A DNA stretch of 64,000 bases, taken from IMG/VR virus record IMGVR_UViG_3300025770_001492, positions 1 to 64,000 of that record; one strand, written 5' to 3'. Below, piece by piece: positions 1,659 to 43,021 of this stretch. A program made the translations under genes and the position numbers. The notes below the pieces were generated by a model. It had not been told where the DNA came from. It ran no database searches and saw only the letters and a list, made by a program, of their open reading frames with translations. Numbering within the stretch: the stretch's first letter is position 1; each line of letters begins with the position of its first letter.

Positions 1659-2948
1659 TTACGCTGCTTTTCGCTTAACTTCCTTACGGACATATTTTGC
1701 ATCAATAGAAACACTTGTGTCTTTCATGTTAGGCAAGTCGAACATCATGTCGTTCATGACTTCTTCAACAACGCCCCTAAGAGCACGAGCACCTGTTTTT
1801 CTTTCTATTGCTTGTTGTGCAATTTCTTCTAATGCACCATTGGAAAACTTCAACTCTACGCCATCCATTTCAAACAATCTCTGGTACTGTTTTACGAGAG
1901 CATTTTTTGGCTTGGACAGAATTCTAACAAGAGCATCTTTTGTCATCGAATTCACATGAGTAAGAACAGGTAATCGACCAACCAACTCAGGAATCAAACC
2001 AAATTGCGTGATGTCGTCTGTAGTGATGAATGGCATCCATTCACTGTCATCTTTTTTAACATCTGACAAATTTTGTTGTCCAAATCCAATTGATTTTTTG
2101 TTTTTTCTCTTATTAACAATCTCTTCAAGACCAACAAATGTCCCTCCGCAAATAAACAGAATATTTGAAGTGTCAAGTCTAAGATATGACTGCTCTGGAT
2201 GCTTTCTGCCTCCTTGTGGAGGAACATTTGCAACTGTTCCCTCAAGCATTTTCAGCAAACTTTGCTGCACGCCTTCGCCAGAAACATCTCTAGTGATAGA
2301 AACATTACGACTGGTTGAGCCAATCTTATCGATCTCATCTAAATAAATAATCCCTCTTTGCGCAGCTTCAATATCGCCTTCTGCGTTGAATATCAACTTG
2401 AGCAAAAGATTTTCAACATCTTCACCTACGTATCCAGCTTCTGTCAAAGTAGTTGCGTCACCGATTGCAAACGGGACATGAATAAATTTAGCCAAGGTCT
2501 CAGCCATCAAAGTTTTACCGCAACCAGTTGGCCCAATCATGAGAATATTAGATTTGTCAATTTCCACATCTTTAAAACTCTTACTCGGAACAATAGAAGA
2601 AATTAGTCGTTTGTAGTGATTTACGACAGCAACAGCCATTGATTTTTTGGCATAATCCTGTCCGATGATATATTGATCAAGGTGAGTCACAATCTCGGCA
2701 GGAGCGGGAATCTCTTTGTCGAGGAATTTTGCGAAGCTGTTTGAGCTTTGCTCATCCTCTTTTTTCTCTGATTTATAAACCTGCTCTGCAAGCTTGATGC
2801 AGTCATTACAAATATATACAGTCGTATCTTCGTACTTGTCTGACTCTTTTGCTAGTCTGTTGGATGTGCCCTCTACCAAAGGTCCAACTTCTCTATAACT
2901 TTTGTTGCAAAAATCACACGCTTGATGTGGCCTCTTACTCTTCGGCAT
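1659..2948 (-). CDS. clpX: ATP-dependent Clp protease ATP-binding subunit ClpX
   Basis: N-terminal C4 zinc-binding domain, [47 protein letters not shown]; SD AAGGAG. Confidence 0.97.
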
Positions 2949-5900: not shown

Positions 5901-6971
5901 TTAACTTCCAGATATTAACTCGCTAATTGAGCCATGTTCATGAGTCCTTCTGATTGACTGGGCAAATATTTTAGCTGTTTCGATAATGTGAGTATTCTTC
6001 AGAGTTGATTCATTTAATCTGAATGGAGGGATTGTGTCTGAAATAACTAATCGAGGGACTTCCTTCAAAAAATCATTCGCCTCGCCAACAAACAGTCCGT
6101 GAGTGGCGCATGCTGCCCACGGTTCTCCTCCGTGGCTTATAATCGCATCTATGCTTGACTTTATTGTTTTCCCGCTAGAAATCATATCGTCAAGTATGAT
6201 GACTCTCTTGTCTTTAACATCACCGATTATATCATCTCCAACAGTTACCGTTGAAGACATCTTTCCATTGTCGCCAGCGTTAGACACTCTTTCTTTATCG
6301 ACAGAAGCTAGGCCAATCTTAACGTCTTCACCCAATAAAGACTTTATTTTTTTTTCTAAAGAATTTCTAAATCTTCGGCACCTTCCTATGCCTCCAGAAT
6401 CGGGAGCAAGCACCACTAAGTTGTCTAAATCATTTTTCAAAGGATCTGGAATAGAATTCTTTTCATCAAAACCAAGCAAATAATCAACAAGAAGGTTTTT
6501 AATTTCTAGATTGTCAACAGTTAATGGCCGGTCACCAATTGGTGCAGAGTTTTGATAGGCTCCTAAATTATGAACATCCATCGTGATTGCACGCCTGACT
6601 CCCATGCTCTTAAGCAAATGACCAACATACTTTGTTGTAATTGGCGCACGACTCTCTGTTTTTCTGTCTTGTCTTGAAAATCCCCAATAAGGAGATATTA
6701 CGCTAATTTCCCCAGAGGACGCATCAATCAGCGAGCCAATAAAAGTAAGTAAATTCCAGTACTTTTCACCCACGCTCTGATCGTCATCTCCATAGGTAGA
6801 CTGAATGACGTAGCACTCAAAGCCTCTAACGTTTACATCGCTTTTTAGATAAGACTCAGTATCAGAAAAAAAGTTCTCAGTATGAGGAGAAACTGATAGG
6901 TCTAAATGGTCTGCAACTTTCTTCGCATAGTCGCCTGTTCCACTCAGGCCAAAGATTCGAACGTCTTTCAT
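5901..6971 (-). CDS. prs: ribose-phosphate pyrophosphokinase (PRPP synthetase)
   Basis: FSDTE, SRQDRK, MDVH, APDSGG, DKER, ILDDMISSGKT, ATHGLF. Confidence 0.93.
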   Translation of the reverse strand: MKDVRIFGLSGTGDYAKKVADHLDLSVSPHTENFFSDTESYLKSDVNVRGFECYVIQSTYGDDDQSVGEKYWNLLTFIGSLIDASSGEISVISPYWGFSRQDRKTESRAPITTKYVGHLLKSMGVRRAITMDVHNLGAYQNSAPIGDRPLTVDNLEIKNLLVDYLLGFDEKNSIPDPLKNDLDNLVVLAPDSGGIGRCRRFRNSLEKKIKSLLGEDVKIGLASVDKERVSNAGDNGKMSSTVTVGDDIIGDVKDKRVIILDDMISSGKTIKSSIDAIISHGGEPWAACATHGLFVGEANDFLKEVPRLVISDTIPPFRLNESTLKNTHIIETAKIFAQSIRRTHEHGSISELISGS

Positions 6972-14732: not shown

Positions 14733-15314
14733 ATGAGAAAAGCGGCAGTAATAATTGACAGCAGAAGCAAGAAGGAACTCAAAGAAACAATTAATAGGCA
14801 TATGGACTACTTGCCTAACTGGGATCTTGTGCATATCGGAGATACAAAGTTCGAGGTGATGCAAGAATACCAGATGTACATGATGACTCACAATTTTTGG
14901 AAACGCCTTGAAAAATATGACAAAGTATTAATCTTTCAATGCGATACTGAGATACTGAGATTGGGAGTAGATGAATTTCTAGAATATCCCTACACATATT
15001 ATGGTGCCCCATGGGGTCCAAATTTTCCTGGAAAAACCCACAAAAACTTCAAGCTTTCACTAGGAGGAAACGGAGGAATAAGCCTTAGAGATGTGCAGGC
15101 TCATTTAAAGGTTACAAAAAACAGAAAGCCTAGATCAATGCAATATGAAGACATTTGGTTTTGTCGAAATTTGCCAAACGTCGCACCATACGAAATATGC
15201 AAAAGCTTTTCCGTTGAAAGCATGTTTGAGCTAGGAACTGTGTGCGCACATAAAATAGATCAGTTTTTATCTAAAGAAGAATGTTCAAAAATCAGAAACC
15301 AATATAATGCTTAA
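14733..15314 (+). CDS. DUF5672-like glycosyltransferase-like protein
   Basis: LIFQCD, YGAPW, GGNGGISLR, EDIWF, FSVE. Confidence 0.65.
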   Translation: MRKAAVIIDSRSKKELKETINRHMDYLPNWDLVHIGDTKFEVMQEYQMYMMTHNFWKRLEKYDKVLIFQCDTEILRLGVDEFLEYPYTYYGAPWGPNFPGKTHKNFKLSLGGNGGISLRDVQAHLKVTKNRKPRSMQYEDIWFCRNLPNVAPYEICKSFSVESMFELGTVCAHKIDQFLSKEECSKIRNQYNA

Positions 15315-16146
15315 AATAAAAAACAACAAAAACAAATACACAAATATGAAAGCAACTTTAGAAGAGTCTTTCTGGCCTTGCGCTGTTCATCCTAATATGA
15401 TTTGTAAAAAAGGAGAAAAAAGCGATTTCGCCAGAGGTATTGTTGAACATATGATCGACGAAAAAATGTCTGGAAAGCGGATTCTAAACTTTGGATTTGA
15501 AGATTATCCTGTATCGAAAATAATAAGCAAGGAATACAACCCAGAAATTTCTGTTGGATTTAGCTTCTTCCGTTTGGGAAAAAAAAATAAAAAAAACCTT
15601 TTGTTGACTAACGATATTGAAGACGTTCAAGAAAACGGACCATACGATATAATTCTGATCTATGATGTCATAGATCACATTCAAGAAGACCCAGTAGATA
15701 TATTAAAAGAAGCTAAAGATCTACTAAAGAAAAATGGAACAATCTATGTTAGATTTCATCCGTTCTGCTCAAGGAATGCTCTCCACCTGCATCATGATCT
15801 AAACAAAGCGTACATCCACCTGTTGTTCACAGGAAAAGAGCTAGACATGATCGTTCCAAATAATAAAAAGAAATACAATAGAGGGATAATCAATCCTTCG
15901 TTATATGACGACTACATAAAGACCAGTGGGCTAAAAGTTAAATACAAAAGGGAAGTTTTAGAAGTTCGTAATTGGCCGTTTTATACTAGCAAAGAAAAAG
16001 TTTTGAATCCAAGAGTAGAATTAAATGAAATATTCAAAGAAAATAAAAGAAAAATAAGTCAAATAAATGAAGTAAAAAATTGGAAAAGATTTATAGGACT
16101 GATAGACAGGAACATAGAATATATTGATTATGCGTTGGTGAAGTAA
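15307..16146 (+). CDS. class I SAM-dependent methyltransferase
   Basis: YDIILIYDVIDH, LKKNGTIYVRFHP; paralogue of 30552 and 33226 genes. Confidence 0.7.
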   Translation: MLKIKNNKNKYTNMKATLEESFWPCAVHPNMICKKGEKSDFARGIVEHMIDEKMSGKRILNFGFEDYPVSKIISKEYNPEISVGFSFFRLGKKNKKNLLLTNDIEDVQENGPYDIILIYDVIDHIQEDPVDILKEAKDLLKKNGTIYVRFHPFCSRNALHLHHDLNKAYIHLLFTGKELDMIVPNNKKKYNRGIINPSLYDDYIKTSGLKVKYKREVLEVRNWPFYTSKEKVLNPRVELNEIFKENKRKISQINEVKNWKRFIGLIDRNIEYIDYALVK

Positions 16147-20748: not shown

Positions 20749-21546
20749 TTAAATGAATGTCTTCCGCAAGGGGGCATGGCTTGAAACTGACTTCATCCAT
20801 AATTGATCTTCTATGTCGAAAATTATATTTTTTGTATTTTCATCTATTTCTGAGTTTGAAAAAATATCTAATGACCTTCCCATGTCTATCATTGTAATAT
20901 CTTTACCGAATAGCTTATAAATAAACCAAAATGACATCATTTCCCCACATTGAAAGATTATAATTGATTTTTCTTCTTCTTTTTTCAAATCAAAAAGTAT
21001 GTCATTTTTATATTTTTCTATGGTGTTCAATTCAACAACTATATGTTTAAAATTTCTAAACCCACAAAAGCTTCCAACATCAGAAAGATGCTTCATTCCA
21101 ACTAAAACAACACGTTTTCCGCCAATGCATTTCATGAAATTCATAAAACTTTTTTGAATACAAAATGATTTCCACATTTGTCCATAATATAATTTTTCGT
21201 TTATGTCAATATGTTTCTCCAATTGACTAATTACTGATTTTTCACTTCCTATTTTTACACCTTCTTTTACATTAGGCACAATTGGAGGCCCGTGACTAGA
21301 AATTCCTAACATAAAATTTTCATCATTAGGCAAATTTTTCAACATAGACACACATTCTTCGATTGTTTCAGCTTTGTGTATCTTTTCAAATATGCCCAAC
21401 CAAGGCTGATCTTTATTTAACATTTGCCAAAACGCATGATTTAATTTCGCAAAAGAAAAAGATGTATTAAGTTGTATTTTTTCAATAAAAAAATCAACTT
21501 CTGGTAACAGTAGTTCATAATTTGACAAGTTGAATCTAAACATCAT
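20749..21546 (-). CDS. hypothetical protein, possibly GT-D fold
   Basis: SFAKLN start and DMGRSLD end loosely resemble GT-D; glycan cluster context. Confidence 0.35.
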   Translation of the reverse strand: MMFRFNLSNYELLLPEVDFFIEKIQLNTSFSFAKLNHAFWQMLNKDQPWLGIFEKIHKAETIEECVSMLKNLPNDENFMLGISSHGPPIVPNVKEGVKIGSEKSVISQLEKHIDINEKLYYGQMWKSFCIQKSFMNFMKCIGGKRVVLVGMKHLSDVGSFCGFRNFKHIVVELNTIEKYKNDILFDLKKEEEKSIIIFQCGEMMSFWFIYKLFGKDITMIDMGRSLDIFSNSEIDENTKNIIFDIEDQLWMKSVSSHAPLRKTFI

Positions 21547-21589
21547 GGTCCTTATTTGCTTTTTGCCCTATAAAATAGTATATATTAAC

Positions 21590-22918
21590 ATGAAAATTGG
21601 AATTGGAATATCTTGCTACAACAGGAGCAACATCGTAAGAGAAAGTTGCCGCACATTGCTAAACTTTAAAAAAAAATACAAAATAATCGTTTCTGACGAT
21701 GGATCGAGTGAAAACCAACAAACATATGGCATTCCAATTATTCATGGCAAAAACATGGGAGTAGCAATTAACAAAAATCGCCTACTCTATCACTTAAGAG
21801 ATTGTGATTACATATTTTTGCTAGAAGATGATGTTCGTATTAAAAACATGGAATTCATTGAAAAATTCATAGAATTAAACAAAAAAAATGGATGTAGTTT
21901 CTTGTCTTATGGACCAATAGAAACTTGGAATTTTTGGAAAATTTTAAAAAAAGAAAAAGGATTCATAGAATATAAAACATCAAAAAACACAAATCCAAAA
22001 CTTTTCTACACACCAGGAAGTTTCACCGCTTTAACAAAACAATCATTAGAAAAAGTAGGTGGTCTTAATTCAAGATTCAAAGGATTGGGAATGGAACACA
22101 TGGAGTGGTCTATGAGGTTTGAAAGACAAAAAATGAGCATGGATTCAAAGCACATTTACAAAACACTAGACCTGAAGAATTCTTTAGAATTTTACAATGT
22201 AAAACGAAATAAAAGAGACATAAATCAATGTAAAAAAAATGAAAAACTATATTACGAATTAATTGAATCACCACATATTAAAAATACTGACTACCTAAGC
22301 AGGAAGGACCTATACTTTAAGCCAAGAGTATATGGAATAGGCATGTCCAAAACCGGCACCAATAGTTTAACAGAAGCATTAAGAATTTTGAACATACCTT
22401 GTGAACATTTTCCAATAGACCAAAGATTCTTGGAAAGCTTAAACAAACAAAATACTAATGCTTTTGACTTTCACCAAAGCATAACAGATATAACAACCAT
22501 ACCATTCATAGAAAAACTTTCGAATCATTACCCCGAATCTAAATTCATACTCACAACTAGAGAAGAAAAATCTTGGATTAGATCTATCAAACATCATTGG
22601 GAAAAAGGGCACGAGCTTTCTCCAATTGGAAAGAACTTTGAAAAAATGCACCCTTTAACTAAAAGGCTGCTGAAAGATGTTTATGGAAGAACTTCATTTG
22701 ATGAAGAGCACTTTCTTAAAAAGTATAGATTGCACACAAAAACCGTCAATGATTTATTCCAAGCAAAAATCCACAGTAAAAGATTAATCAACATGAATAT
22801 AGTCGAAGGAGATGGATGGGTGAAATTATGTAAATTTTTAGAAATTAAAACATTGCCAATTAAAAATTTTCCTTTCAAAGGATCGTCTAAAAAATCTTAT
22901 TTTAAAAAATTCATGTAA
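21590..22918 (+). CDS. GT2-sulfotransferase fusion
   Basis: SDDGS and LLEDD, then GIGMSKTGTNSL, ILTTRE, GDGWVKLCKFL. Confidence 0.82.
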   Translation: MKIGIGISCYNRSNIVRESCRTLLNFKKKYKIIVSDDGSSENQQTYGIPIIHGKNMGVAINKNRLLYHLRDCDYIFLLEDDVRIKNMEFIEKFIELNKKNGCSFLSYGPIETWNFWKILKKEKGFIEYKTSKNTNPKLFYTPGSFTALTKQSLEKVGGLNSRFKGLGMEHMEWSMRFERQKMSMDSKHIYKTLDLKNSLEFYNVKRNKRDINQCKKNEKLYYELIESPHIKNTDYLSRKDLYFKPRVYGIGMSKTGTNSLTEALRILNIPCEHFPIDQRFLESLNKQNTNAFDFHQSITDITTIPFIEKLSNHYPESKFILTTREEKSWIRSIKHHWEKGHELSPIGKNFEKMHPLTKRLLKDVYGRTSFDEEHFLKKYRLHTKTVNDLFQAKIHSKRLINMNIVEGDGWVKLCKFLEIKTLPIKNFPFKGSSKKSYFKKFM

Positions 22919-30551: not shown

Positions 30552-31478
30552 ATGGACGTGTCAAAAGAGCTACAAACTCTAAGAAAACTAGTCGAAACCT
30601 GCATGGAAAAGCTTGAAAAGCTTGAAAACCATCAGCAAACAGAGACCGTTCGAGCAGAAGAGCCTGTCGAATCAGAAGTAACAAATCCAGAATTCAAAAA
30701 TCTAAAAGATCTTTTAAACAGCGACCAGTGGCCACATGCAGTTCCACCTGATCTGATTTGTGACATTGCATCCGAAGAAGACAAAATGGAGCGAGCAGAA
30801 GGCGTTCTGTCGATAGTTTTAGACCAAAGCCTTAATGGGTCAAAGTTCTTGGACTTCGGATGCGGAGAAGGCCATATGGCGGTTCAGGCGAAAAAAGAAG
30901 GTGCTGAAGTTTCTGTTGGATATGACATAAAAGAACAATTTTGGGATAAGCCATCCGTAGCAAATGTTACAATTTTAACCACTGAATTTGAAAAAGTAAA
31001 AGAAAATGGACCCTATGACACCATTTTAATTTACGATTTATTAGATCATGTTGAAGACCAAGAATTGGTTCTTGAGCAAATAAAACAAGTATCTAAACCT
31101 GAAACGAGAATATTTGCAAGAGTTCACCCGTGGGCGGGACGGCATGCGTCTCACTTGTACAAAAAAATCAACAAAGCTTTTGTACATCTGGTATTCAGCG
31201 AAGAAGAATTAGACGAAATGGGATTCGAGTTAAAAGAAGATTCTAAAAAACCAAACAATCCAGCATTACTGCCTTTGCACACTTATGCAAAATTATTCAA
31301 GTCTAAATTTGAAATTATAAGCCAAGATATAGATCGTGACCCAATCGAAGGTTTTTTCAAAAATAATCAGTTGGTCAAATCAAGAATTATGAAAAATTTT
31401 GCTGGAAAAGATGTCGGAAATTTCCCAAACTATCAAATGGGACAGTCATTCATAGATTACAAACTTAAAATATCTTAG
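30552..31478 (+). CDS. class I SAM methyltransferase with N-terminal coiled coil
   Basis: LDFGCGEG, YDTILIYDLLDH. Confidence 0.85.
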   Translation: MDVSKELQTLRKLVETCMEKLEKLENHQQTETVRAEEPVESEVTNPEFKNLKDLLNSDQWPHAVPPDLICDIASEEDKMERAEGVLSIVLDQSLNGSKFLDFGCGEGHMAVQAKKEGAEVSVGYDIKEQFWDKPSVANVTILTTEFEKVKENGPYDTILIYDLLDHVEDQELVLEQIKQVSKPETRIFARVHPWAGRHASHLYKKINKAFVHLVFSEEELDEMGFELKEDSKKPNNPALLPLHTYAKLFKSKFEIISQDIDRDPIEGFFKNNQLVKSRIMKNFAGKDVGNFPNYQMGQSFIDYKLKIS

Positions 31479-32199
31479 AGTTTTTTTCGCTAGTGTCGTA
31501 TCCGTGTTCAATTGCAAATTTAACAATCTCCTCTTTTAGAGGAGATTCTGGTATATCTTTGTATGACCTTTTATCACCTTTTTTATTGTTCGTATTTGAA
31601 TGCTTGTTAGAAAAGGAATCTGTTTTATCTTCTATATTCAAAAATCCAAGAAATCCATTACCATCTTCGATCCGATGCTTGAAGTATAAACTTTCATCTG
31701 CATTCAACTCAATCAATTTATTCCAAGCAAGATAATAATAACAGGCTCTTTCTATTGGGTTATCATAATGCCATATTTCAGGAATCTCAATAGAGATGTT
31801 ATCTTCCCACGGCTTCAGGAGTTTATGAGTTTTGTTTTGAAAATATCCAAATCTAATCCAAGAAAAAATAACTTTAGCGGGGTCTCTTATCAAATGTACT
31901 ATTTTAACACCATTTAATATTTTATGACCTAAAAAATTAGCAGCCATATAGCTGCTTTCGCCAACAGGCAAAACGCCCTCTGGATACCAATTTGAATTTT
32001 CTTTTTTTGAGCACTTGCTATTTTTTAAACTTCCAGAACCAAGTGTCTTTAAAGCATAAAAAATTCCCTCTGGTGTAAATATTGATTCATGAGTGCAAGG
32101 GTGTCCCAAACTGGTCAGCAGTTTCGCTGCGTACACAGTTCCGCATCTTCCTGTTCCCGTTATTACGAAATCTAAATGAATTTTGTTGTTTTGTTGCAA
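31465..32199 (-). CDS. sulfotransferase-like protein
   Basis: TGTGRCGT, HLIRDP. Confidence 0.7.
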   Translation of the reverse strand: MQQNNKIHLDFVITGTGRCGTVYAAKLLTSLGHPCTHESIFTPEGIFYALKTLGSGSLKNSKCSKKENSNWYPEGVLPVGESSYMAANFLGHKILNGVKIVHLIRDPAKVIFSWIRFGYFQNKTHKLLKPWEDNISIEIPEIWHYDNPIERACYYYLAWNKLIELNADESLYFKHRIEDGNGFLGFLNIEDKTDSFSNKHSNTNNKKGDKRSYKDIPESPLKEEIVKFAIEHGYDTSEKNSKIF

Positions 32200-33236
32200 C
32201 CTTTTTCCTCTTTAGCTATATCTTGGGAGATTTCAGATCCATCAACTTCTTCTTCACAACCTGTGCAGTTTTTAGACTTAATAAATTTCGTATGGACAAC
32301 CACAGCAGGCGGGATTGCCAAAGTTTTTTCTACATTTACATCTTTTTCAACAAACTCTTCTCTTGCTTTTCCCTTTGCAATCTGTATCCGTATATATTTC
32401 AGATAGGACCTAGTGTCCTTCTCTAAATTGTATTTTTTTTCTTCATCTTCAAGAGATTCATCTCCTGTAGGGTGGAACACTCTTGCATCACATATTATAG
32501 GAACTTTTCCAAAGTCTTCATGAACTTTATGTTTAACGCCAGATCGACTAATTTTACAACAAAGCATTTCATCAGTTATTTTTAAATAACTGCATTTTTT
32601 GGACGACTTCATATAGGTGCTAATTTGATCATGCGGAAAAAATAAATGATCATAAAATTTGTCAAAATTTTCTAATGAAAACCAACCATAAGATCTCATG
32701 AATTCTAAACAGGATTCTGTCCACAACATACATGGTCCAGCAATTACTTGACTTTGTGGTTCGAAATTCTTAGAAAAAGGCATTCCTACTTCATTGTGAA
32801 AATAATGATGCATTTGCAAGTCTATTTCTGGAAACGGCCAAATAGTTCCCCCAAAGAATATTTTTTTATCCCTTCTGCACTTGTTAGAAAACTCCGACAA
32901 GAATGGTCCGGTACATATACAATCTGAGTCAAGGGTGATTAAGTCATTGAATATATGGTGCTTTTCAAAATACTCAATACCACCAACGAAACTTCTTAAG
33001 CATCCTCGTCCCCATCCGTTTTTTGTTCCTGTGAAGAATACGAATTCTTCTCCATAAATGTCTGATAATTGGTTGGCCATTAATTCATTGTTGTCAACAA
33101 TGAATGTAAAAATATAATCATCAACATTAGGATGAAAGAACCTAAACGCTTCTTCATTGTCGATCATGAATTCAGGATGTTTGTGTCCCAGAACTATTAC
33201 TAACGTTTTGTGTTCACCTGAATTTTCAAGAATCAT
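32172..33236 (-). CDS. glycosyltransferase-like protein
   Basis: TLDSD DxD motif; cluster context. Confidence 0.5.
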   Translation of the reverse strand: MILENSGEHKTLVIVLGHKHPEFMIDNEEAFRFFHPNVDDYIFTFIVDNNELMANQLSDIYGEEFVFFTGTKNGWGRGCLRSFVGGIEYFEKHHIFNDLITLDSDCICTGPFLSEFSNKCRRDKKIFFGGTIWPFPEIDLQMHHYFHNEVGMPFSKNFEPQSQVIAGPCMLWTESCLEFMRSYGWFSLENFDKFYDHLFFPHDQISTYMKSSKKCSYLKITDEMLCCKISRSGVKHKVHEDFGKVPIICDARVFHPTGDESLEDEEKKYNLEKDTRSYLKYIRIQIAKGKAREEFVEKDVNVEKTLAIPPAVVVHTKFIKSKNCTGCEEEVDGSEISQDIAKEEKGCNKTTKFI

Positions 33237-34908
33237 TATTCAAACCACAAATATAAAATGCCGACTGTATTTTCAGTATATCTATTAGCTTTCCGCTAAT
33301 GTTTCCTCTGCAACAATACTCCCATTCTGCCTCTGTAGGAAGTCTGTATTTTTTATTTTCTTTAGAAGATAAGACATCACAAAATTCAACACTATCAATC
33401 CAAGAAACATCAGTAACCGGAAATTCATCAACTTCTTTAATTGGGTTTTTTATCTTTATTTTGTAATTTTTGTAAACACTTGAATTTGAAATATTTTTTA
33501 ATGGTATTTTTTTTACACCTGTTAATTCAGCATACTGAGAAGTTGTAACTGGAGCGTCTGCCATATAGAAAGAATTCTCAATACAAACAATTTTAGAATT
33601 TGCATTCTTACCAGCCATCATAAATTCTCCAATAGGTATTTTCACCATATTTATCCCTAAAGAATTGACCCATTCAATGCCCATGTCTAATTCAGATTCC
33701 ATCAATAATCTAAACCCCAAATCATCCATGCTTTGGTCATGTCTTTTTGAATAGCGGGAAGACGATGAAATCATTGTTGGTTTAGACCTATAAGACCCTC
33801 CTCTAATTATTCTGTGTTTTTGTTTGTAGTCTAGACCGCAGCGTTCAGCTACATCTTTTACTTTATCACCTTCTTGCCGTAAGCATCTTGGCGGATCATT
33901 AGTCCACTCAGCATCAAGGCACCATTCCCAAATATTGCCATGCATGTCATATAGCCCAAACCCATTGGCCTGAAGGGATTTAACTTGTTCTGTAGACCAC
34001 CTGTCTGCAATAATTTTACGACTATCATAATTATCAGAACCATAATTAAAATTTGTATGAGAGAAAATATTTTTATACAAAAAGGCTTTAGTTTCACATT
34101 TCCAATTAGAACATATTTTTTCCCATATTAAATCATTTTCCCTAAAAAATTCTGGCAACTCTTTTTCAACAAGTTCTTCTTCTAAAATTTTAAATCCTGA
34201 AGATGATATGCAGTCTTCATAGGAAAAAACAGGATCTTTTAACCTGCGGATATTTTTATCTGACCTAGTCTGAGAATCATCAAAACACAAATGAATGTAA
34301 GCCAAATTATACTCACTCTTACATCCATATCTTGAAGACCATGGAAAACATTTTATGTATATTTTCCCTTCAGGAGAAAGCATTTCTTTTATTTTAGACA
34401 ATTCTTCGGTTGGGTTCTCCATATAATCCAAAACATCCCACAATAGAACAACATCATATGGAGCATGTTGTTTAACGAACTCAAAGTCGTCTGAAAGGTT
34501 TATTTCGCCAGGTTTCCACTGTTTCTCTATATCGTAACCAATTGAAGTTTTAGCATTCTTTTTTGACTCAAAAACAACATGCCCTTCTCCGCATCCATAA
34601 TCTAAGAAATTTAAATCTTCCAAAATAAGCTTTTCACAGATTTGACCTGCTCTGGTTTTTTTATCATTTTCTGTTTTAACTAAAAGATTTGTAGGAACAG
34701 CAAGAGGCCAAAACCCAAACACAGGCCATTCAAGTTTTTTGTAGATCCTCTTATTTTTGAATTCAAAATTTGAATCCTCTTTCAGCTTTTTAATTACGAA
34801 CTCGAAAGATCCATGCGAACTACAAATTTCAACAATTTCAGACAACTCTATAAAACCTTTATTCCTTAAAAAAGTTAAAATGGTTCGATATGAGTATTCA
34901 GAATTCAT
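33226..34908 (-). CDS. SAM methyltransferase with an inserted, circularly permuted FGE-sulfatase (SUMF1) domain
   Basis: LDYGCGEG, then GLYDMHGNIWEW...RGGS...GFRL ahead of MVKIPIGEF...LPTEAEWEY. Confidence 0.8.
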   Translation of the reverse strand: MNSEYSYRTILTFLRNKGFIELSEIVEICSSHGSFEFVIKKLKEDSNFEFKNKRIYKKLEWPVFGFWPLAVPTNLLVKTENDKKTRAGQICEKLILEDLNFLDYGCGEGHVVFESKKNAKTSIGYDIEKQWKPGEINLSDDFEFVKQHAPYDVVLLWDVLDYMENPTEELSKIKEMLSPEGKIYIKCFPWSSRYGCKSEYNLAYIHLCFDDSQTRSDKNIRRLKDPVFSYEDCISSSGFKILEEELVEKELPEFFRENDLIWEKICSNWKCETKAFLYKNIFSHTNFNYGSDNYDSRKIIADRWSTEQVKSLQANGFGLYDMHGNIWEWCLDAEWTNDPPRCLRQEGDKVKDVAERCGLDYKQKHRIIRGGSYRSKPTMISSSSRYSKRHDQSMDDLGFRLLMESELDMGIEWVNSLGINMVKIPIGEFMMAGKNANSKIVCIENSFYMADAPVTTSQYAELTGVKKIPLKNISNSSVYKNYKIKIKNPIKEVDEFPVTDVSWIDSVEFCDVLSSKENKKYRLPTEAEWEYCCRGNISGKLIDILKIQSAFYICGLNNDS

Positions 34909-35153
34909 ATGGATAAAGCTCTCAAAATACAGAGAACACTAAGAACCATAAAAATCGTCAAGAGACCAAAAAACAAAATTCCTTTATTTATTTCATTATT
35001 TATATGGTCTACTGCGTCGTACAACTGATCTTCATCTATTTTGTTTGATTGAACCAAATAGTCAAATTGAGTTTGGGTAATTTCTTCTTTTGCTATCTTG
35101 TTCGCCAAGGAGACAACCTCGGAAGGCAAAGAGTAAAAATCTAATTTCTTCAT
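34905..35153 (-). CDS. small C-terminally anchored membrane protein
   Basis: Hydrophobic C-terminal helix. Confidence 0.55.
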   Translation of the reverse strand: MKKLDFYSLPSEVVSLANKIAKEEITQTQFDYLVQSNKIDEDQLYDAVDHINNEINKGILFFGLLTIFMVLSVLCILRALSI

Positions 35154-35156
35154 ATT

Positions 35157-35324
35157 TCAACTTTTATTATAATTTTTTCTAATAGGCGCAGGATGAAGCT
35201 TTCTTTTCCTAAACTTAGCAAAACCAACTCTCAACTGAGAAACATCTTGATTGGTTAGCAAAGCATGATTTTTTAAAAAAGTCTCATACTCTTTGTCTGT
35301 GAGATCTGATAAAGTCCTTCTCAT
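35157..35324 (-). CDS. small basic protein (55 aa)
   Basis: Manual translation MRRTLSDLTDKEY...; SD AAGGAG. Confidence 0.55.
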   Translation of the reverse strand: MRRTLSDLTDKEYETFLKNHALLTNQDVSQLRVGFAKFRKRKLHPAPIRKNYNKS

Positions 35325-35370
35325 TTTGAACTCCTTGTTTAAAATAGTAATCTTTGTTCTAATTTATAAT

Positions 35371-36081
35371 ATGAGATCTTGCGTATATTATTTAAACGAA
35401 AGCAAACAACATGTAAAGATGGCGTTAAACAGCCTCAAGATGCTTCGCTTCCATAACAAGAACATACCTGTAAGGGTATTTATTCTGTCGAACGAATTCA
35501 TTCCAAAATATAAGTTCACAAAAAATTTGTTAGAATTCTGTAGTTCAAACGACATTGAAACAGTAAAAAAACCAATAAAATACGACTATTTTTGTTCAAA
35601 CAAATACCTCATAAAAGACTGCCCCGAAGAACGAATTCTCTTCATAGACTCAGATACATTTATTTTCGGGGATGTGGAAAATATATTTAAAAAATATGAA
35701 AACTGCGACTTTGCAGGATGCAAAAACAAATGGGTTGAAGGAAGAAACTGGAGATTCCTGAATGGAAACATCCCTTTTAATGGAGGCGTTCAACTTTACA
35801 ATAACAACTCGCATAAAAAAATACTAAAAAAACTACCAACTACCTGCAACAACCTAGGGGAGGATCTCGAAAAATGGATAGAAGGAAGAATGGATTGGAA
35901 CAGAGAAGAGATGGCGATATCAAAAATTGTAATTGAAGATAAGTATTCTTTTAAATATTTCGAAAAAGAAGACTGTATGATTCCTCTGGTCGAGGATGAT
36001 TTAGAAAATTTCAAAAAAACAACCATATTCCACTCATTCACACATCTTTGGGAACGAGTATACAAAAAGGTAGTAGTATGA
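35371..36081 (+). CDS. GT8-like glycosyltransferase
   Basis: FIDSDT, FNGGV, REE, FHSF. Confidence 0.65.
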   Translation: MRSCVYYLNESKQHVKMALNSLKMLRFHNKNIPVRVFILSNEFIPKYKFTKNLLEFCSSNDIETVKKPIKYDYFCSNKYLIKDCPEERILFIDSDTFIFGDVENIFKKYENCDFAGCKNKWVEGRNWRFLNGNIPFNGGVQLYNNNSHKKILKKLPTTCNNLGEDLEKWIEGRMDWNREEMAISKIVIEDKYSFKYFEKEDCMIPLVEDDLENFKKTTIFHSFTHLWERVYKKVVV

Positions 36082-37522: not shown

Positions 37523-38329
37523 ATGATAAAATGGTTGGCATGGAAAGTAATTTCAAATTACGTGGCTGGCGAAACTGCTGAAGAGGCTGTTCAACTGGCG
37601 AAAAACTTGGAAGAAAGAGGCTTTTCGTCAACCATATCTCTCTTGGGCGAAGGATGCACAATTAATGAATCGAATCTGGCCTTTTGGGAATACATTCTAC
37701 TCATTGGATTGCTTGAGAAAAAAGAATTGAATGATTGTGGAATATCCATGAAATATACCCATCTGGGGGAATATAACATAACTAGAATGTTTGAGTTGAT
37801 TGGGCGTACAAGAGTCAATTTTCCAATATGCCTAGACATGGAAAACTACAAAAACAAGAGATACATAATAGACTTATATAACAAATTAAAAAAACAAAAA
37901 AAAACATCAACAGTTCTCCAGTCTAGAATAAGGGACTCAATAGAAGATATAAAACAAATTGATAATGTTAGAATTTGCAAGGGAATTTACAAAGAGAGCA
38001 AAGACGTTAGTTTGTTTGGAGAAGACGTAAATTCAAACTTTAAAAAACTAGTGGAACACTGTGTAGAAGAAAACAAATATGTCTCTATAGCGACACACGA
38101 CCTAGATCTAATTAAAGATTGTGAAAAAATACTAAAAGAACATAAAAAATGTGAATTCCAGTTTTTGTACGGAGTTCCAATAGAAGAAGAAGCAAACAGA
38201 TTGAAAGAATCAGGTCAAAAAGTAAGATACTACATACCATATGGAAAAAATTGGTTCCAATATTGTTGGCGAAGAGCAAAAGAAAATCCAAACATAGTCA
38301 AACATGTTATTAAGAACATGTTTGGATAG
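37523..38329 (+). CDS. monofunctional proline dehydrogenase
   Basis: YVAGET, LDME, RICKGIYKE, IATHD, FQFLYG, YIPYG, RRAKENP. Confidence 0.9.
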   Translation: MIKWLAWKVISNYVAGETAEEAVQLAKNLEERGFSSTISLLGEGCTINESNLAFWEYILLIGLLEKKELNDCGISMKYTHLGEYNITRMFELIGRTRVNFPICLDMENYKNKRYIIDLYNKLKKQKKTSTVLQSRIRDSIEDIKQIDNVRICKGIYKESKDVSLFGEDVNSNFKKLVEHCVEENKYVSIATHDLDLIKDCEKILKEHKKCEFQFLYGVPIEEEANRLKESGQKVRYYIPYGKNWFQYCWRRAKENPNIVKHVIKNMFG

Positions 38330-39608
38330 CGATAATTTCATCTATAAACTTGTTCAGAGAGTCACAGCAAACTTTTGAGGACGAATCTATATTGACCGGC
38401 TCTAAAACAGTTCCATTTGAAAAACTAAAAGAATTTGTTTCAAATTTATCTGTTATTACATGTTTAATAGATCTTCTTGTAAAGTCTAAATCAAATCTTT
38501 CACCATTACTGTCCATGCCGGTATTCACCAAAAATACTTTACAATCGTGCTGATTAATTTTTTTTACCAACATATCACTATACTTCTCAACTGGAAGCGG
38601 CATAAATGGTCCTCCATAACATGGAGAAAACACCTTCTTTATTTCGTTAACTCCATCTTCCGTTCCCGGCATCTTGCTTGTATATCCAGTCTCAAAAAAC
38701 AGCTTAATTGCATCTCCCTTTATTCGACTAATTGGAGGCACAACTCCTGTTACGTCCATAGTTAAGAAAAATATGTTATTTGGATGGTCGAAAACATGAT
38801 CGCACTCATTCAGATCCGACAACCATGAATTTTTAATCAATTTTGCTGGATAACTGCTTCTGGCGTTATCGTGACCGATATTTTCCTCAATTAGGACATC
38901 GTTCTCTCTAGCGGCCTCCATAGCTTCGTAAATCGCCTCATGGGTCTTTGGATGAAGTCCCTGTGTCTTTGCATAGCACCCCGTCTCGATCAATTCTAGG
39001 CCATTATCAGACCAAGATAGCTCATCGTCCCCAATTAACTTGAAATCAGGATCACTACTTAGTGTAGTTTTTCCTGTGCCACTCAACCCAAACATCAGAT
39101 TTGTTGTGCATTTGTATGTGAAACTGCCGCAATGCATTGGCAATTTGTCCTCAAGTGGAAGCTCAAATCCCATTGCTGTGAATACTGATTTTTTAATTTC
39201 TCCAAGATAACTCGTGCCAGCTATTAAAATCAAATTTGTATCAAGATTAATCCAAATTGTTGGATCAACGTCTATATCAAGATTGTGAAGAATTAACCAA
39301 TCTGCACTTTTTATCAAAGGTCTATTAGTGTAAGCGTCAGACATCGCATCAAACATGTTCTGAACAAACTTCGCATGCCAATCACTTGTTGTTCGAACAT
39401 TGAAATTCTTACTATTCGATCTGAAGTGCAAACTGTGACTGTATGAATCTAAATCGTTAAATAAAGAGAACATATTTTCAAAATCTTCGATTTTTCCAAT
39501 TTGAACATCCTCATTACGACTTTTATCCAAGAGTCTTGTCGCATCTCCAAAGAAAAATTTTCCTTTAGGAGATCTTCCTGTCGGTGTTGTTTTTATTTTA
39601 ACATTCAT
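38310..39608 (-). CDS. pckA: phosphoenolpyruvate carboxykinase (ATP), shortened
   Basis: TGRSPK, FGLSGTGKTTLS, IGDDE, GCYAK, GVVPPIS, FSPCYGGPF, LVNTG. Confidence 0.92.
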   Translation of the reverse strand: MNVKIKTTPTGRSPKGKFFFGDATRLLDKSRNEDVQIGKIEDFENMFSLFNDLDSYSHSLHFRSNSKNFNVRTTSDWHAKFVQNMFDAMSDAYTNRPLIKSADWLILHNLDIDVDPTIWINLDTNLILIAGTSYLGEIKKSVFTAMGFELPLEDKLPMHCGSFTYKCTTNLMFGLSGTGKTTLSSDPDFKLIGDDELSWSDNGLELIETGCYAKTQGLHPKTHEAIYEAMEAARENDVLIEENIGHDNARSSYPAKLIKNSWLSDLNECDHVFDHPNNIFFLTMDVTGVVPPISRIKGDAIKLFFETGYTSKMPGTEDGVNEIKKVFSPCYGGPFMPLPVEKYSDMLVKKINQHDCKVFLVNTGMDSNGERFDLDFTRRSIKHVITDKFETNSFSFSNGTVLEPVNIDSSSKVCCDSLNKFIDEIIAIQTCS

Positions 39609-39614
39609 TATCAA

Positions 39615-41472: not shown

Positions 41473-41922
41473 CTATTTCGAACCTGTCAACTTGTTTTTT
41501 TGTCTTTTTAACATAGTTTCCAATTTGGAAATTTGATTCAAGTTACCGAACCGCAAGCTGTCTATGGATTTTTCTATCTCTATAAGATCTAGCATTACTT
41601 GTTTATGTGTTTCTTCTACCTCTTCCACTTCTTCAATTTTAAGTTCTTCGAATTCAAGCTCACTTCCTGAGCACTCTGGGCACATGTGCTCGCCCTTTTT
41701 GTGGTTTTCTGCATAGTGTGCTACCCGAACCAGCAGATCACTAACCACATATTGTGTCTTAGCAACCTCAGAAATAGACTCAATAATCTCAGTATTTTGT
41801 TTTATAATATCAATACGTTCTTCTCTTGATGTGTTAATTCTATTTGGAAGCAGAATAACTAACAAGATAATTAATATTGACACCACAACAAAAGCAAACT
41901 TAAACATGGTAGGCAGCTTCAC
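41473..41922 (-). CDS. membrane-anchored coiled-coil protein
   Basis: N-terminal TM helix, CPEC. Confidence 0.6.
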   Translation of the reverse strand: MKLPTMFKFAFVVVSILIILLVILLPNRINTSREERIDIIKQNTEIIESISEVAKTQYVVSDLLVRVAHYAENHKKGEHMCPECSGSELEFEELKIEEVEEVEETHKQVMLDLIEIEKSIDSLRFGNLNQISKLETMLKRQKNKLTGSK

Positions 41923-43021
41923 CTTTTACTCCAATTCTCTCACGCTTGATGTACCTATAATCATCTTTTGGAGACATTTCCAAAAGTGAATGATAGATGA
42001 GGTTTGTTGTATTTTTAACATCCTTTTTCATCACCATTTCTACAGAAGTATGCATATATTTTAATGGCAAGCTAATCAAGCACGAAGGAATACCGCCGCT
42101 TGATTTGAAAAACGCAGATGTATCGGTTCCACTATTTCCATTATAAGTACCAAGCTGATACTTTATTTTATTCTTCTTTGCTACTCCTAGAACTTGATCT
42201 AACAAGTTTCTTTGAATATCTGGCCCATAATACAAAGTTGGACCATTCCCGCAGGACACATCTCCACACAATCTGGCATTGTACATAGGAGAGTGACTGT
42301 CATGTGTGACATCAGTTATTATCGCAACATCAGGCTGTATTGAGTTTGCGATCATTTCAGCACCATGAAGCCCAACTTCCTCTTGAACAGCATTTACAAT
42401 GTAAAGATCGAAAGGAAGTTCAATGTCATTTTCTTCAAGCTTTCTAGCAACGTTGGCGACCATGTATCCGCCAATTCGGTTGTCTAATGCACGACAAAGG
42501 TAGTAGTCGCCCATCTTCTCAAAAGGAGCATCATAAGTCATTGTGGCACCAACATGAATGCCCATTTTTTCTACTTCCTTTTTTGAACTTGCTCCAACAT
42601 CGACATAAAGATTTTTAACTTCTGGCGTTTCTTTGTCTCGTTCATGGATGGCGATCCACCCAAACACGCCACGAACATTCCCCTTTTTGCCTAAGATGTT
42701 CACCCTTTGGCCAGGAGCAACCATTTCGTCCGATCCGCCATTCCGAACGACAGAAATATATCCTTTTTCGTCGATATGACTTATGTTCCAACCTATTTCA
42801 TCCGCATGAGCTTCTATTACTACTTTATATTTGGATGACTGACCTGTGTACTTTACGCCTACAGCATTCCCATAAGCGTCTGTCTGTACCTTGTCCACAT
42901 AGTCTTGAATATAGTCTATCCAAACTTCTTGACCCGCCATCTCCCATCCTGTTGGAGATTGGGTGTTAAGGTATTTTTCTAAAAATTCTTCTTTTTTCAT
43001 TTGAGGCTTATTCTTTTTCAT
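41900..43021 (-). CDS. M42 family metallo-aminopeptidase
   Basis: AHADEIG, ALDNRIG, QEEVGLHGA, DVTH, KYMHT. Confidence 0.92.
   Translation of the reverse strand: MKKNKPQMKKEEFLEKYLNTQSPTGWEMAGQEVWIDYIQDYVDKVQTDAYGNAVGVKYTGQSSKYKVVIEAHADEIGWNISHIDEKGYISVVRNGGSDEMVAPGQRVNILGKKGNVRGVFGWIAIHERDKETPEVKNLYVDVGASSKKEVEKMGIHVGATMTYDAPFEKMGDYYLCRALDNRIGGYMVANVARKLEENDIELPFDLYIVNAVQEEVGLHGAEMIANSIQPDVAIITDVTHDSHSPMYNARLCGDVSCGNGPTLYYGPDIQRNLLDQVLGVAKKNKIKYQLGTYNGNSGTDTSAFFKSSGGIPSCLISLPLKYMHTSVEMVMKKDVKNTTNLIYHSLLEMSPKDDYRYIKRERIGVKGEAAYHV

What the first reader, a model, noticed from the sequence alone, without database searches (positions are those of the whole stretch)
33226..34908. Circularly permuted FGE-sulfatase domain inserted into a methyltransferase
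Seen: after the SAM-binding core (DYGCGEG near 34590) the C-terminal half of an FGE-sulfatase domain (GLYDMHGNIWEW near 33940, RGGS, GFRL near 33715) comes before its N-terminal half (MVKIPIGEF near 33640, VSWIDSVEFC, LPTEAEWEY near 33330). The protein then ends in a strand resembling the final strand of the paralogous methyltransferases (QSAFYICGL versus QSFIDYKL and IEYIDYAL). Established: the normal order is MVxIPxG...LPTEAEW...GLYDMxGNVWEW...GFR. Inference: a natural circular permutant lectin-like module was inserted near the end of the MTase fold, perhaps to target methylation to a glycan.
Basis: partly seen in the sequence, partly recalled or inferred. Interest (0 to 1): 0.7.

Follow-up and report, generated by a model that had tools for sequence, protein, structure and literature searches.

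The report
Permuted FGE-like domain inside phage methyltransferase
A marine jumbo phage encodes a methyltransferase that carries, just before its last strand, a lectin-like FGE domain whose two halves are in swapped order; this is a real, conserved and apparently undescribed natural circular permutation, but its biochemical target is unknown.

Summary
The 560-aa ORF (33226-34908, minus strand) has a winged-helix N-terminus and a class I SAM-methyltransferase core. Then comes the C-terminal half of an FGE-sulfatase domain (residues 288-402, Pfam positions 144-254), followed by the N-terminal half (420-540, positions 4-129). A final strand completes the methyltransferase sheet.

It is not an assembly artefact. 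Contigs from several independent marine studies are identical across the gene. Ten homologues down to about 30% identity keep the same order and the same tail.

Both models agree on the fold. In the AlphaFold2 model (pLDDT 84) residues 547-556 act as strand beta-7 of the methyltransferase. In a separate complex prediction the two FGE halves pack together (0.76, controls 0.00).

The swapped module aligns colinearly across the repeat junctions of tandem FGE-repeat proteins. This suggests it arose by out-of-register capture or truncation of a tandem array.

The FGE catalytic cysteines and the OvoA/EgtB iron domain are absent, so the module is non-catalytic and probably binds something.

The gene lies in a 25-kb sugar-modification island of a jumbo myovirus of at least 245 kb. 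A glycan target is therefore plausible, but it is only inferred. This protein's subclade has also lost histidines and a lysine conserved in the rest of the methyltransferase family.

The parts
33226..34908 (-). Whole gene, 560 aa (P0001): winged helix, methyltransferase, permuted FGE-like module, methyltransferase last strand
   Evidence: Its start overlaps the stop of the upstream ORF by 4 nt and its end overlaps the downstream ORF by 11 nt, an operon-like arrangement.
34738..34908 (-). N-terminal winged-helix-like domain (residues 1-57)
   Evidence: AF2 secondary structure H2-17, E19-21, H22-28, H32-44, E48-51, E54-57, pLDDT about 95. Missing or replaced in P0009, P0204 and P0130.
34099..34725 (-). 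Class I SAM-methyltransferase core, strands beta-1 to beta-6 plus a helical lid (residues 62-270). Motif I DYGCGEG is at 103-109; D126 and D158 are conserved.
   Evidence: Pfam Methyltransf_23/12/11. 32% identity to the uninserted paralogue. VIA-align Z 12-14 to class I methyltransferases.
34048..34098 (-). Flexible linker into the inserted module (residues 271-287)
   Evidence: pLDDT below 50 for residues 271-283.
33703..34047 (-). FGE-sulfatase C-terminal half (residues 288-402; Pfam positions 144-254): YGS, GLYDMHGNIWEW, RGGS, GFRL
33718..33795 (-). Least conserved stretch of the module (residues 372-397). It corresponds to the FGE catalytic-cysteine loop and to the variable region of DGR target proteins. 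No cysteine pair is present.
   Evidence: Identity 0.36 among close homologues against 0.7-0.8 elsewhere. Alignments to FGE structures. Motif scan.
33652..33702 (-). Linker joining the native C-terminus of the FGE fold to its native N-terminus (residues 403-419, includes NSLG)
   Evidence: Colinear with the inter-repeat linkers of tandem FGE proteins.
33289..33651 (-). FGE-sulfatase N-terminal half (residues 420-540; Pfam positions 4-129): MVKIPIGEF, VSWIDSVEFC, LPTEAEWEY
33229..33288 (-). Short helix plus the final strand, beta-7 of the methyltransferase sheet (residues 541-560; strand 547-556)
   Evidence: AF2 strand, pLDDT 83-89. Methyltransferase superpositions run to model residues 556-560 and to the C-termini of the solved chains. 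Most conserved segment among close homologues, 0.82.
30552..31478 (+). Uninserted paralogous methyltransferase (308 aa) ending in ...QSFIDYKLKIS
32172..33236 (-). Downstream partner gene (354 aa, no Pfam or PHROG match, contains a DSD motif). Conserved next to two distant homologues.
   Evidence: 32% identity to L009:9656-10531. That protein is 38% identical to L007:9621-10472. Not conserved in L100.
34905..35153 (-). Upstream 82-aa ORF with a hydrophobic C-terminal segment, translationally coupled to the gene
   Evidence: no family match

Best explanation
**What it is (shown).** The gene encodes a class I SAM-dependent methyltransferase of a phage-typical Methyltransf_23 family. A complete but circularly permuted FGE-sulfatase (C-type-lectin-like) domain is inserted into the connection between the beta-6/lid region and the last strand, beta-7. 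The permuted domain's new ends lie at the short loop between the 'EYACRG' and 'YPWG' motifs of the canonical fold. The canonical C-terminus (GFR strand) is joined to the canonical N-terminus (MVxIP strand) by a linker of about 17 residues.

**How it arose (inferred).** A methyltransferase like its neighbour at 30552-31478 captured, or fused to and then trimmed, an out-of-register piece of a tandem FGE-repeat gene. That piece ran from the middle of one repeat to the middle of the next.

**What it does (inferred).**
- The module lacks the FGE catalytic cysteines and any iron-binding DinB domain. It therefore most likely acts as a non-catalytic, ligand-recognising lid beside the acceptor pocket.
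- It would hold or select the acceptor for methylation. The acceptor is most probably a sugar of the glycan built by the surrounding glycosyltransferase, sulfotransferase and sugar-nucleotide island of this jumbo phage.
- The variable loop at residues 372-397 is the likely contact surface.
For: **Order of halves.**

**Conservation.** The same architecture and tail occur in 10 homologues at 30-79% identity, with invariant core motifs in both halves. A half-domain HMM scan of 269 retrieved proteins gave 'M-C-N' only for this family (11 sequences). Nearly all the other FGE proteins run N-C, singly or in tandem, and none shows a stand-alone C-N unit.

**Not an artefact.** Twenty marine runs from about 15 studies hold the sequence. 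Contigs from four studies cover the gene with zero differences and no joints at domain borders.

**Fold.**
- AF2 with a 50-row alignment gave pLDDT 84.2, with strands beta-1 to beta-6 followed by strand 547-556.
- VIA-align Z 12-14 to class I methyltransferases, with model ranges about 75-559 reaching the chains' C-termini.
- TM 0.71 and rmsd 2.6 A over residues 56-556 to a 292-aa Uroviricota methyltransferase cluster.
- Halves 284-412 and 413-543 folded as two chains scored ipSAE 0.76. The best of 3 controls was 0.00. That mark was reached by 58 of 80 solved complexes and 2 of 110 mismatched pairs. There were 217-260 contacts, through the conserved motifs of both halves including GFRL and MVKI.

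**Origin.** Single colinear alignments of residues about 305-538 run across the repeat junctions of many tandem FGE proteins, for example P0012 at 30% over 310 columns including the linker.

**Non-catalytic.** There is no cysteine pair after RGGS and no HX3HXE motif in any member. FGE-type C-lectin folds are used as binding scaffolds, as in TvpA (PMC5758913).

**Context.** GT1, GT2, a GT2-sulfotransferase fusion, DegT aminotransferase, a sugar epimerase/dehydratase, DUF5672 and sulfotransferase-like genes lie at 12-37 kb. GT8, GT2, GT34 and UDP-galactopyranose mutase lie beside distant homologues.
Against: - No coordinates were available, so the native-like packing of the permuted domain and its position relative to the active site rest on model confidence, secondary structure and interface lists. 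No permutation-aware superposition was run.
- The complex prediction used my own alignment. It may also partly reflect the model's memory of FGE folds.
- The glycan target is inferred from gene context only. Characterised FGE-fold ligands are peptides, proteins or small thiols.
- The subclade containing this protein (P0001, P0003-P0005) has replaced family-conserved residues: DVLDH to DVLDY, CHPW to CFPW, RHG to RYG, GxH to GxK/N, NKA to NLA, plus a 2-residue deletion. Its catalysis or acceptor may therefore differ from its relatives, or be lost.
- The partner gene is not conserved in one of the four loci that have a downstream gene.
Confidence: 0.72

Rival explanations
1. The architecture is as described, but the FGE-like module recognises a protein or peptide rather than a glycan, for example a virion or host protein. 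The enzyme would then be a protein methyltransferase, or would be tethered to a protein.
For: Genuine FGE binds a peptide substrate. DGR-diversified FGE-type C-lectin domains are thought to bind surface ligands (PMC5758913). FGE domains are often fused to kinases, caspases and TIR domains, and the PHROG that matches the module is annotated 'kinase'.
Against: The gene sits in an operon-like run inside a sugar-modification island. Distant homologues also sit beside glycosyltransferases and UDP-galactopyranose mutase.
Confidence: 0.2
2. In this subclade the methyltransferase is catalytically remodelled or dead. The protein would then work mainly as a SAM-sensing or structural binding protein.
For: Four family-conserved histidines and a lysine are lost, with a 2-residue deletion next to strand beta-5, in P0001 and P0003-P0005. 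Distant fused homologues and the paralogues keep them.
Against: SAM motif I, D126 and D158 are invariant. The methyltransferase core and the tail are the most conserved parts among close homologues, at 0.77-0.82. The role of the lost histidines is unknown.
Confidence: 0.15
3. The two half-domains do not fold within one chain. Instead they pair between chains, giving a domain-swapped dimer or oligomer.
For: A permuted order with a short linker could allow swapping. The complex prediction shows only that the halves fit each other, not whether this happens within one chain or between two.
Against: The full-length single-chain AF2 model is confident over both halves. The 17-residue linker matches the inter-repeat linkers of tandem arrays, where neighbouring halves belong to different domains. 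This neither requires nor forbids swapping.
Confidence: 0.08
4. It is an OvoA/EgtB-like thiohistidine enzyme, since that family also combines an FGE-like domain with a methyltransferase.
For: The domain composition is shared. Language-model neighbours are OvoA-like clusters, but at 0.83-0.86, below the tool's 0.9 mark for more than a lead. OvoA 8khq appears among both the sequence and the fold matches.
Against: There is no DinB domain and no HX3HXE iron motif, and both are required in OvoA (PMC8433421). The order here is methyltransferase then permuted FGE, not DinB, FGE, methyltransferase. The methyltransferase belongs to a phage Methyltransf_23 family.
Confidence: 0.02
5. It is an assembly chimera or a decaying remnant of a tandem FGE gene.
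For: None beyond the unusual order.
Against: Independent assemblies are identical. The frame is open. The architecture is conserved down to 30% identity, with invariant motifs in both halves and in the tail.
Confidence: 0.01

Closest known systems
[quoted passage not shown]
   Same: Both halves match the profile well above cut-off and carry the hallmark motifs: MVxIPxGxF, VSW..A..FC, LPTEAEWEYA, GLYDMxGNVWEW, RGGS, GFR. Like TvpA and pFGE, it lacks the catalytic cysteines.
   Different: The halves are in reversed order (circular permutation), and the domain is nested inside another fold. Among 269 related proteins examined, none outside this family shows a stand-alone C-then-N unit; nearly all run N-to-C, singly or in tandem. 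Two literature searches for a circularly permuted FGE domain found nothing relevant.
Phage and bacterial stand-alone Methyltransf_23 class I methyltransferases, such as the window paralogue at 30552-31478 and a 292-aa Uroviricota cluster in the ESM Atlas
   Same: 32% identity over the core, the same WPxA...DxGCGEG...DVxD motifs, and the same terminal strand.
   Different: An insertion of about 255 residues before the last strand. This subclade has also lost the family's conserved His and Lys residues.
OvoA (5-histidylcysteine sulfoxide synthase: DinB, FGE-like domain, methyltransferase)
   Same: It contains both an FGE-like domain and a SAM methyltransferase in one chain.
   Different: No DinB iron domain, opposite domain order, a permuted FGE domain, a different methyltransferase family, and a glycan-island context (PMC8433421).
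Tandem FGE-repeat proteins (2 to more than 20 repeats, e.g. P0012, P0124-P0173)
   Same: The segment from C-half through linker to N-half is colinear with the junction between two repeats, at 30-38% identity and with a similar linker.
   Different: Here only one out-of-register unit exists, with no flanking complementary halves. The two halves must therefore pair with each other.

Membership tests
FGE-sulfatase domain (PF03781) | Sequence match above the Pfam gathering score | tested here: met
   122.7 bits for the whole protein. Each half alone scores 64 and 66 bits against a cut-off of 23.3.
FGE-sulfatase domain (PF03781) | Canonical colinear order, with the N-half (MVxIP...LPTEAEW) before the C-half (GNVWEW...GFR) | tested here: not met
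   Profile positions 144-254 precede positions 4-129 along the protein.
FGE-sulfatase domain (PF03781) | The halves form one compact FGE/C-lectin-like domain | tested here: inconclusive
   Supported by models only. The AF2 model is confident over both halves. The two-chain prediction scored 0.76, with the best of 3 controls at 0.00; that mark was reached by 58 of 80 solved complexes and 2 of 110 mismatched pairs. No coordinates were available and no permutation-aware superposition was run.
Formylglycine-generating enzyme (catalytic FGE) | Pair of catalytic, copper-binding cysteines after RGGS (CxxxxC) | tested here: not met
   The aligned positions are R/S/K/P/T in P0001. No conserved cysteine pair occurs in any of the 10 members.
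Class I SAM-dependent methyltransferase | Motif I (DxGxGxG) and the acidic residue at the end of beta-2 | tested here: met
   D103-G105-C106-G107-G109 and D126 are invariant in the family.
Class I SAM-dependent methyltransferase | Seven-stranded sheet with a final antiparallel beta-7 | tested here: met
   Met in the model only. Strands lie at 100-104, 121-125, 151-157, 177-187, 239-248 and 547-556. Superpositions reach model residues 556-560 and the ends of the solved chains, at Z 12-14. TM 0.71 over residues 56-556.
Class I SAM-dependent methyltransferase | SAM binding and methyl transfer | not testable with these tools
   Needs biochemistry. The loss of family-conserved His and Lys residues in this subclade is a caution.
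OvoA/EgtB sulfoxide synthases | N-terminal DinB domain with the HX3HXE iron motif | tested here: not met
   No DinB match and no HxxxHxE in any member. The requirement is taken from PMC8433421.
DGR variable (C-lectin/FGE-type) target protein | A template repeat and a reverse transcriptase in the element | tested here: not met
   No repeat of the gene elsewhere in the 245-kb record apart from the paralogue's methyltransferase segment. No RVT_1 match. The record is only about half complete.
Circular permutant by duplication and truncation | Colinearity of the permuted unit with the junction of tandem copies of the parent domain | tested here: met
   Single alignments of residues about 305-538 across the repeat junctions of many tandem FGE proteins.

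The most novel reading that the evidence does not exclude
This is a previously undescribed class of phage glycan-tailoring methyltransferases. A circularly permuted C-lectin/FGE domain, created in one step by out-of-register capture from a tandem-repeat gene, has become the built-in acceptor-recognition lid of the enzyme. Its variable loop (residues 372-397) would set glycan specificity.
Probability: 0.3. Interest if true: 0.7.

Novelty: new variant of a known kind. Interest (0 to 1): 0.55.

Why it matters
Natural circular permutants nested inside another fold are rare. They are textbook material for how new protein topologies arise.

Here both presumed parents can be identified: a stand-alone methyltransferase encoded next door, and tandem FGE-repeat proteins. 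The evolutionary route is therefore unusually easy to read, and it can be tested by structure determination and by re-engineering.

The finding also points to a small family, about ten clusters, all from metagenomic or environmental assemblies and mostly marine where the source is recorded. Its members sit in phage sugar-modification islands whose products are unknown. It gives a concrete handle for asking what glycans jumbo phages build or modify.

Standard domain annotation reports only 'methyltransferase + FGE-sulfatase' and hides the permutation.

Tried and rejected
- **AF2 of the module alone.** I submitted residues 284-560 without an alignment.
- **Foldseek against the PDB with the full model.** It returned only methyltransferases. 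The VIA-align and Atlas searches also listed only methyltransferases in their top rows. So no direct structural match of the FGE part was obtained.
- **IMG/VR scan with the family alignment.** It returned only canonical FGE proteins and no further members.
- **DGR hypothesis.** Rejected: no template repeat and no reverse transcriptase.
- **OvoA/EgtB reading.** Rejected.
- **Hallmark searches in the record.** NCLDV capsid, Terminase_6N, family B polymerase and gp23 were all negative. The phage nature came instead from tail sheath, DNA polymerase III alpha, DnaB and an intein-bearing class II RNR.
- **Partner gene.** The downstream gene is not conserved in L100 and has no Pfam or PHROG match.
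- **Literature.** Searches for a permuted FGE domain, and for jumbo-phage sulfotransferase/methyltransferase islands, found nothing relevant.
Full report
**1. The observation**

The minus-strand ORF 33226..34908 encodes 560 aa. Pfam finds Methyltransf_23/12/11 at residues 96-187. It finds FGE-sulfatase (PF03781) in two stretches.

Scanned separately, residues 296-402 match profile positions 155-254 (64 bits), and residues 420-538 match positions 4-127 (66 bits). The cut-off is 23.3 bits. A six-frame scan of the record gives the same two pieces and no other FGE domain in 245 kb. phmmer against solved FGE structures shows the same inversion.

**2. It is real DNA and a real gene**

- Twenty public marine or seawater runs from about 15 studies hold the stretch.
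- Contigs from four different studies lie on 32500-35500 with no differences. Two of them span the whole stretch. The only 'joints' are short hits of 18-24 nt from unrelated contigs. These are assembler contigs rather than raw reads, and some may be the source sample, but they come from separate studies.
- More decisively, full-length homologues at 79, 66, 62, 38 and about 30-35% identity keep the same order and the same tail: P0003-P0009, plus P0130 and P0204 from the exhaustive search.
- I built half-domain HMMs and scanned all 269 retrieved proteins. The architecture 'M-C-N' occurs 11 times, and only in this family. Nearly all the other FGE proteins run N-C, singly or in tandem, and none shows a stand-alone C-N unit.

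**3. The insertion point**

The neighbouring paralogue (30552-31478, 308 aa) aligns with residues 67 to about 290 at 32% identity. It then ends in ...FPNYQMGQSFIDYKLKIS. Stand-alone and tandem methyltransferase relatives end the same way, and their tails align with ILxIQ(S/F)xxY(I/V) at the end of the fused family.

The AF2 model was built with a 50-row alignment mixing the family, tandem-FGE junction segments and trimmed paralogues. It has pLDDT 84.2 and pTM 0.65. Its strands lie at 100-104, 121-125, 151-157, 177-187 and 239-248, followed by 547-556.

VIA-align gives Z 12-14 to many class I methyltransferases. The model ranges run from about 75 to 556-560, and the chain ranges reach the chains' own C-termini, for example 3cc8 at 19-229. 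A 292-aa Uroviricota methyltransferase cluster superposes at TM 0.71 and rmsd 2.6 A over residues 56-556.

So the last 15 residues are strand beta-7 of the methyltransferase. The FGE module is nested between the post-beta-6 helical lid and beta-7, tethered by a low-confidence linker (271-283).

**4. One domain or two fragments?**

I could not obtain coordinates, and sequential aligners cannot show a permuted match. The indirect evidence is as follows.

- Both halves are confidently modelled, with the secondary-structure elements expected of the FGE fold.
- Folded as two separate chains (284-412 and 413-543), they associate with ipSAE 0.76. The best of 3 controls was 0.00. That mark was reached by 58 of 80 solved complexes and 2 of 110 mismatched pairs, and the counts hold only roughly because my own alignment was used.
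- There are 217-260 contacts. The interface runs through the conserved motifs of both halves, including 388-405 (GFRL) and 421-424 (MVKI). These would be the paired terminal strands of the native fold.

This supports a single domain but does not prove it. A pairing of the halves between two chains is not excluded.

**5. Origin**

Residues about 305-538 align as one colinear stretch across the junction between consecutive repeats of many tandem FGE-repeat proteins with 2 to more than 20 repeats. With P0012 the alignment runs for 310 columns at 30% identity, through C-half, linker (ELDMGIEWVNSLGINMVKIP against EISIDLPSELNSIGQRLVTIP) and N-half.

The simplest route is that an out-of-register unit of a tandem array was captured into the beta-6/beta-7 connection of a stand-alone methyltransferase. 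This is the duplication-then-truncation route to circular permutation. It is an inference.

The breakpoint lies in the short loop between EYACRG and YPWG. About 14 profile positions are missing there. The new ends of the module should therefore be close together, which suits an insertion into a hairpin.

**6. What the module is not**

- The FGE catalytic cysteine pair is absent in every member.
- There is no DinB domain or HX3HXE iron motif, so this is not an OvoA/EgtB-type enzyme (PMC8433421).
- There is no template repeat or reverse transcriptase, so it is not a DGR target, at least within this half-complete record.

FGE-type C-lectin domains without FGE activity are regarded as binding scaffolds (TvpA; PMC5758913). 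The stretch equivalent to the FGE active-site loop and the DGR variable region (372-397) is one of the two least conserved parts among close homologues. The other is an insert at 466-494. Their identities are 0.36-0.38, against 0.7-0.8 elsewhere. This fits a diverging recognition surface, or simply a relaxed loop.

**7. Context**

The record is a virus contig of 245,522 bp, estimated to be about half complete. It encodes a tail sheath, DNA polymerase III alpha, a DnaB-like helicase, an intein-bearing class II RNR and PrkA. It is therefore a jumbo myovirus-type phage.

The gene lies in an island at about 12-37 kb. The island holds GT1 and GT2 glycosyltransferases, a GT2-sulfotransferase fusion, sulfotransferase-like genes, a DegT aminotransferase, a sugar epimerase/dehydratase, an ATP-grasp enzyme, a PhyH dioxygenase, DUF5672 genes and two more paralogous methyltransferases.

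Distant homologues sit beside GT8, GT2 and GT34 genes, UDP-galactopyranose mutase and a paralogous methyltransferase. The downstream 354-aa gene is conserved next to two of them but not next to a third.

**8. Mechanism proposed**

- Shown: the architecture, its conservation, and the absence of FGE and OvoA catalytic features.
- Supported by models: an intact methyltransferase sheet and a single packed FGE-like unit.
- Inferred: the module is a non-catalytic acceptor-recognition lid for methylation of a sugar in the island's glycan.

One caution applies. P0001 and P0003-P0005 have replaced histidines and a lysine that are conserved in the rest of the methyltransferase family, including the distant fused members. 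This subclade may therefore use a different acceptor or chemistry, or be inactive.

**9. Novelty**

Both domains are well known, and FGE plus methyltransferase in one chain is known from OvoA. What is new is a permuted FGE domain, nested in a methyltransferase, with both parents identifiable. I found no description of it in the searchable literature. I rate it a new variant of a known kind. It is of moderate interest, mainly to people who study protein evolution, structure and phage glycobiology.

Noticed in passing
window 12000-37200: A sugar-modification island of about 25 kb in a phage. It holds GT1, GT2, a GT2-sulfotransferase fusion (21530-22918), sulfotransferase-like ORFs, a DegT aminotransferase, a Polysacc_synt_2 epimerase/dehydratase, an ATP-grasp enzyme, a PhyH dioxygenase, DUF5672 and DUF6065 genes and three paralogous methyltransferases. 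Its product is unknown.
   Followed up: partly
window 34300-34450 (residues ~155-207 of P0001): The subclade P0001 and P0003-P0005 has lost residues conserved across the methyltransferase family: DVLDH to DVLDY, CHPW to CFPW, RHG to RYG, GxH to GxK/N, NKA to NLA, plus a 2-residue deletion. The acceptor site may be remodelled or activity lost.
   Followed up: partly
window 14733-16146: The third methyltransferase paralogue (15307-16146) directly follows a DUF5672 ORF (14733-15314). The similarity to P0001 starts upstream of its start codon, across a TAG. This may be a split or formerly fused gene.
   Followed up: no
G000:C1:187092-190559: A class II (B12-dependent) ribonucleotide reductase interrupted by an intein with a LAGLIDADG endonuclease.
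   Followed up: no
G000:C1:71482-78831: A 2449-aa ORF with two Laminin_G_3 (concanavalin-like lectin) domains, possibly a fibre or adhesin of the phage.
   Followed up: no
window 1659-2948, 5901-6971, 38310-39614, 41900-43021; G000:C1:120365-122479: Cell-like metabolic and proteostasis genes in a phage: a ClpX-like ATPase, PRPP synthetase, ATP-dependent PEP carboxykinase, an M42 aminopeptidase and a PrkA kinase.
   Followed up: no
P0154, P0195, P0208 (metagenomic proteins): Tandem fusions of two copies of the same methyltransferase family, each copy ending in the conserved terminal strand.
   Followed up: no
P0237 (metagenomic protein, 443 aa): A zinc-ribbon-like N-terminus, a methyltransferase and only the C-half of the FGE domain, then the protein ends. 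It may be a truncated or frameshifted relative, or an intermediate form.
   Followed up: no
window 34905-35153: An 82-aa ORF with a C-terminal hydrophobic segment overlaps the start of the gene by 4 nt (ATGA). It hints that the operon's products act at a membrane.
   Followed up: no
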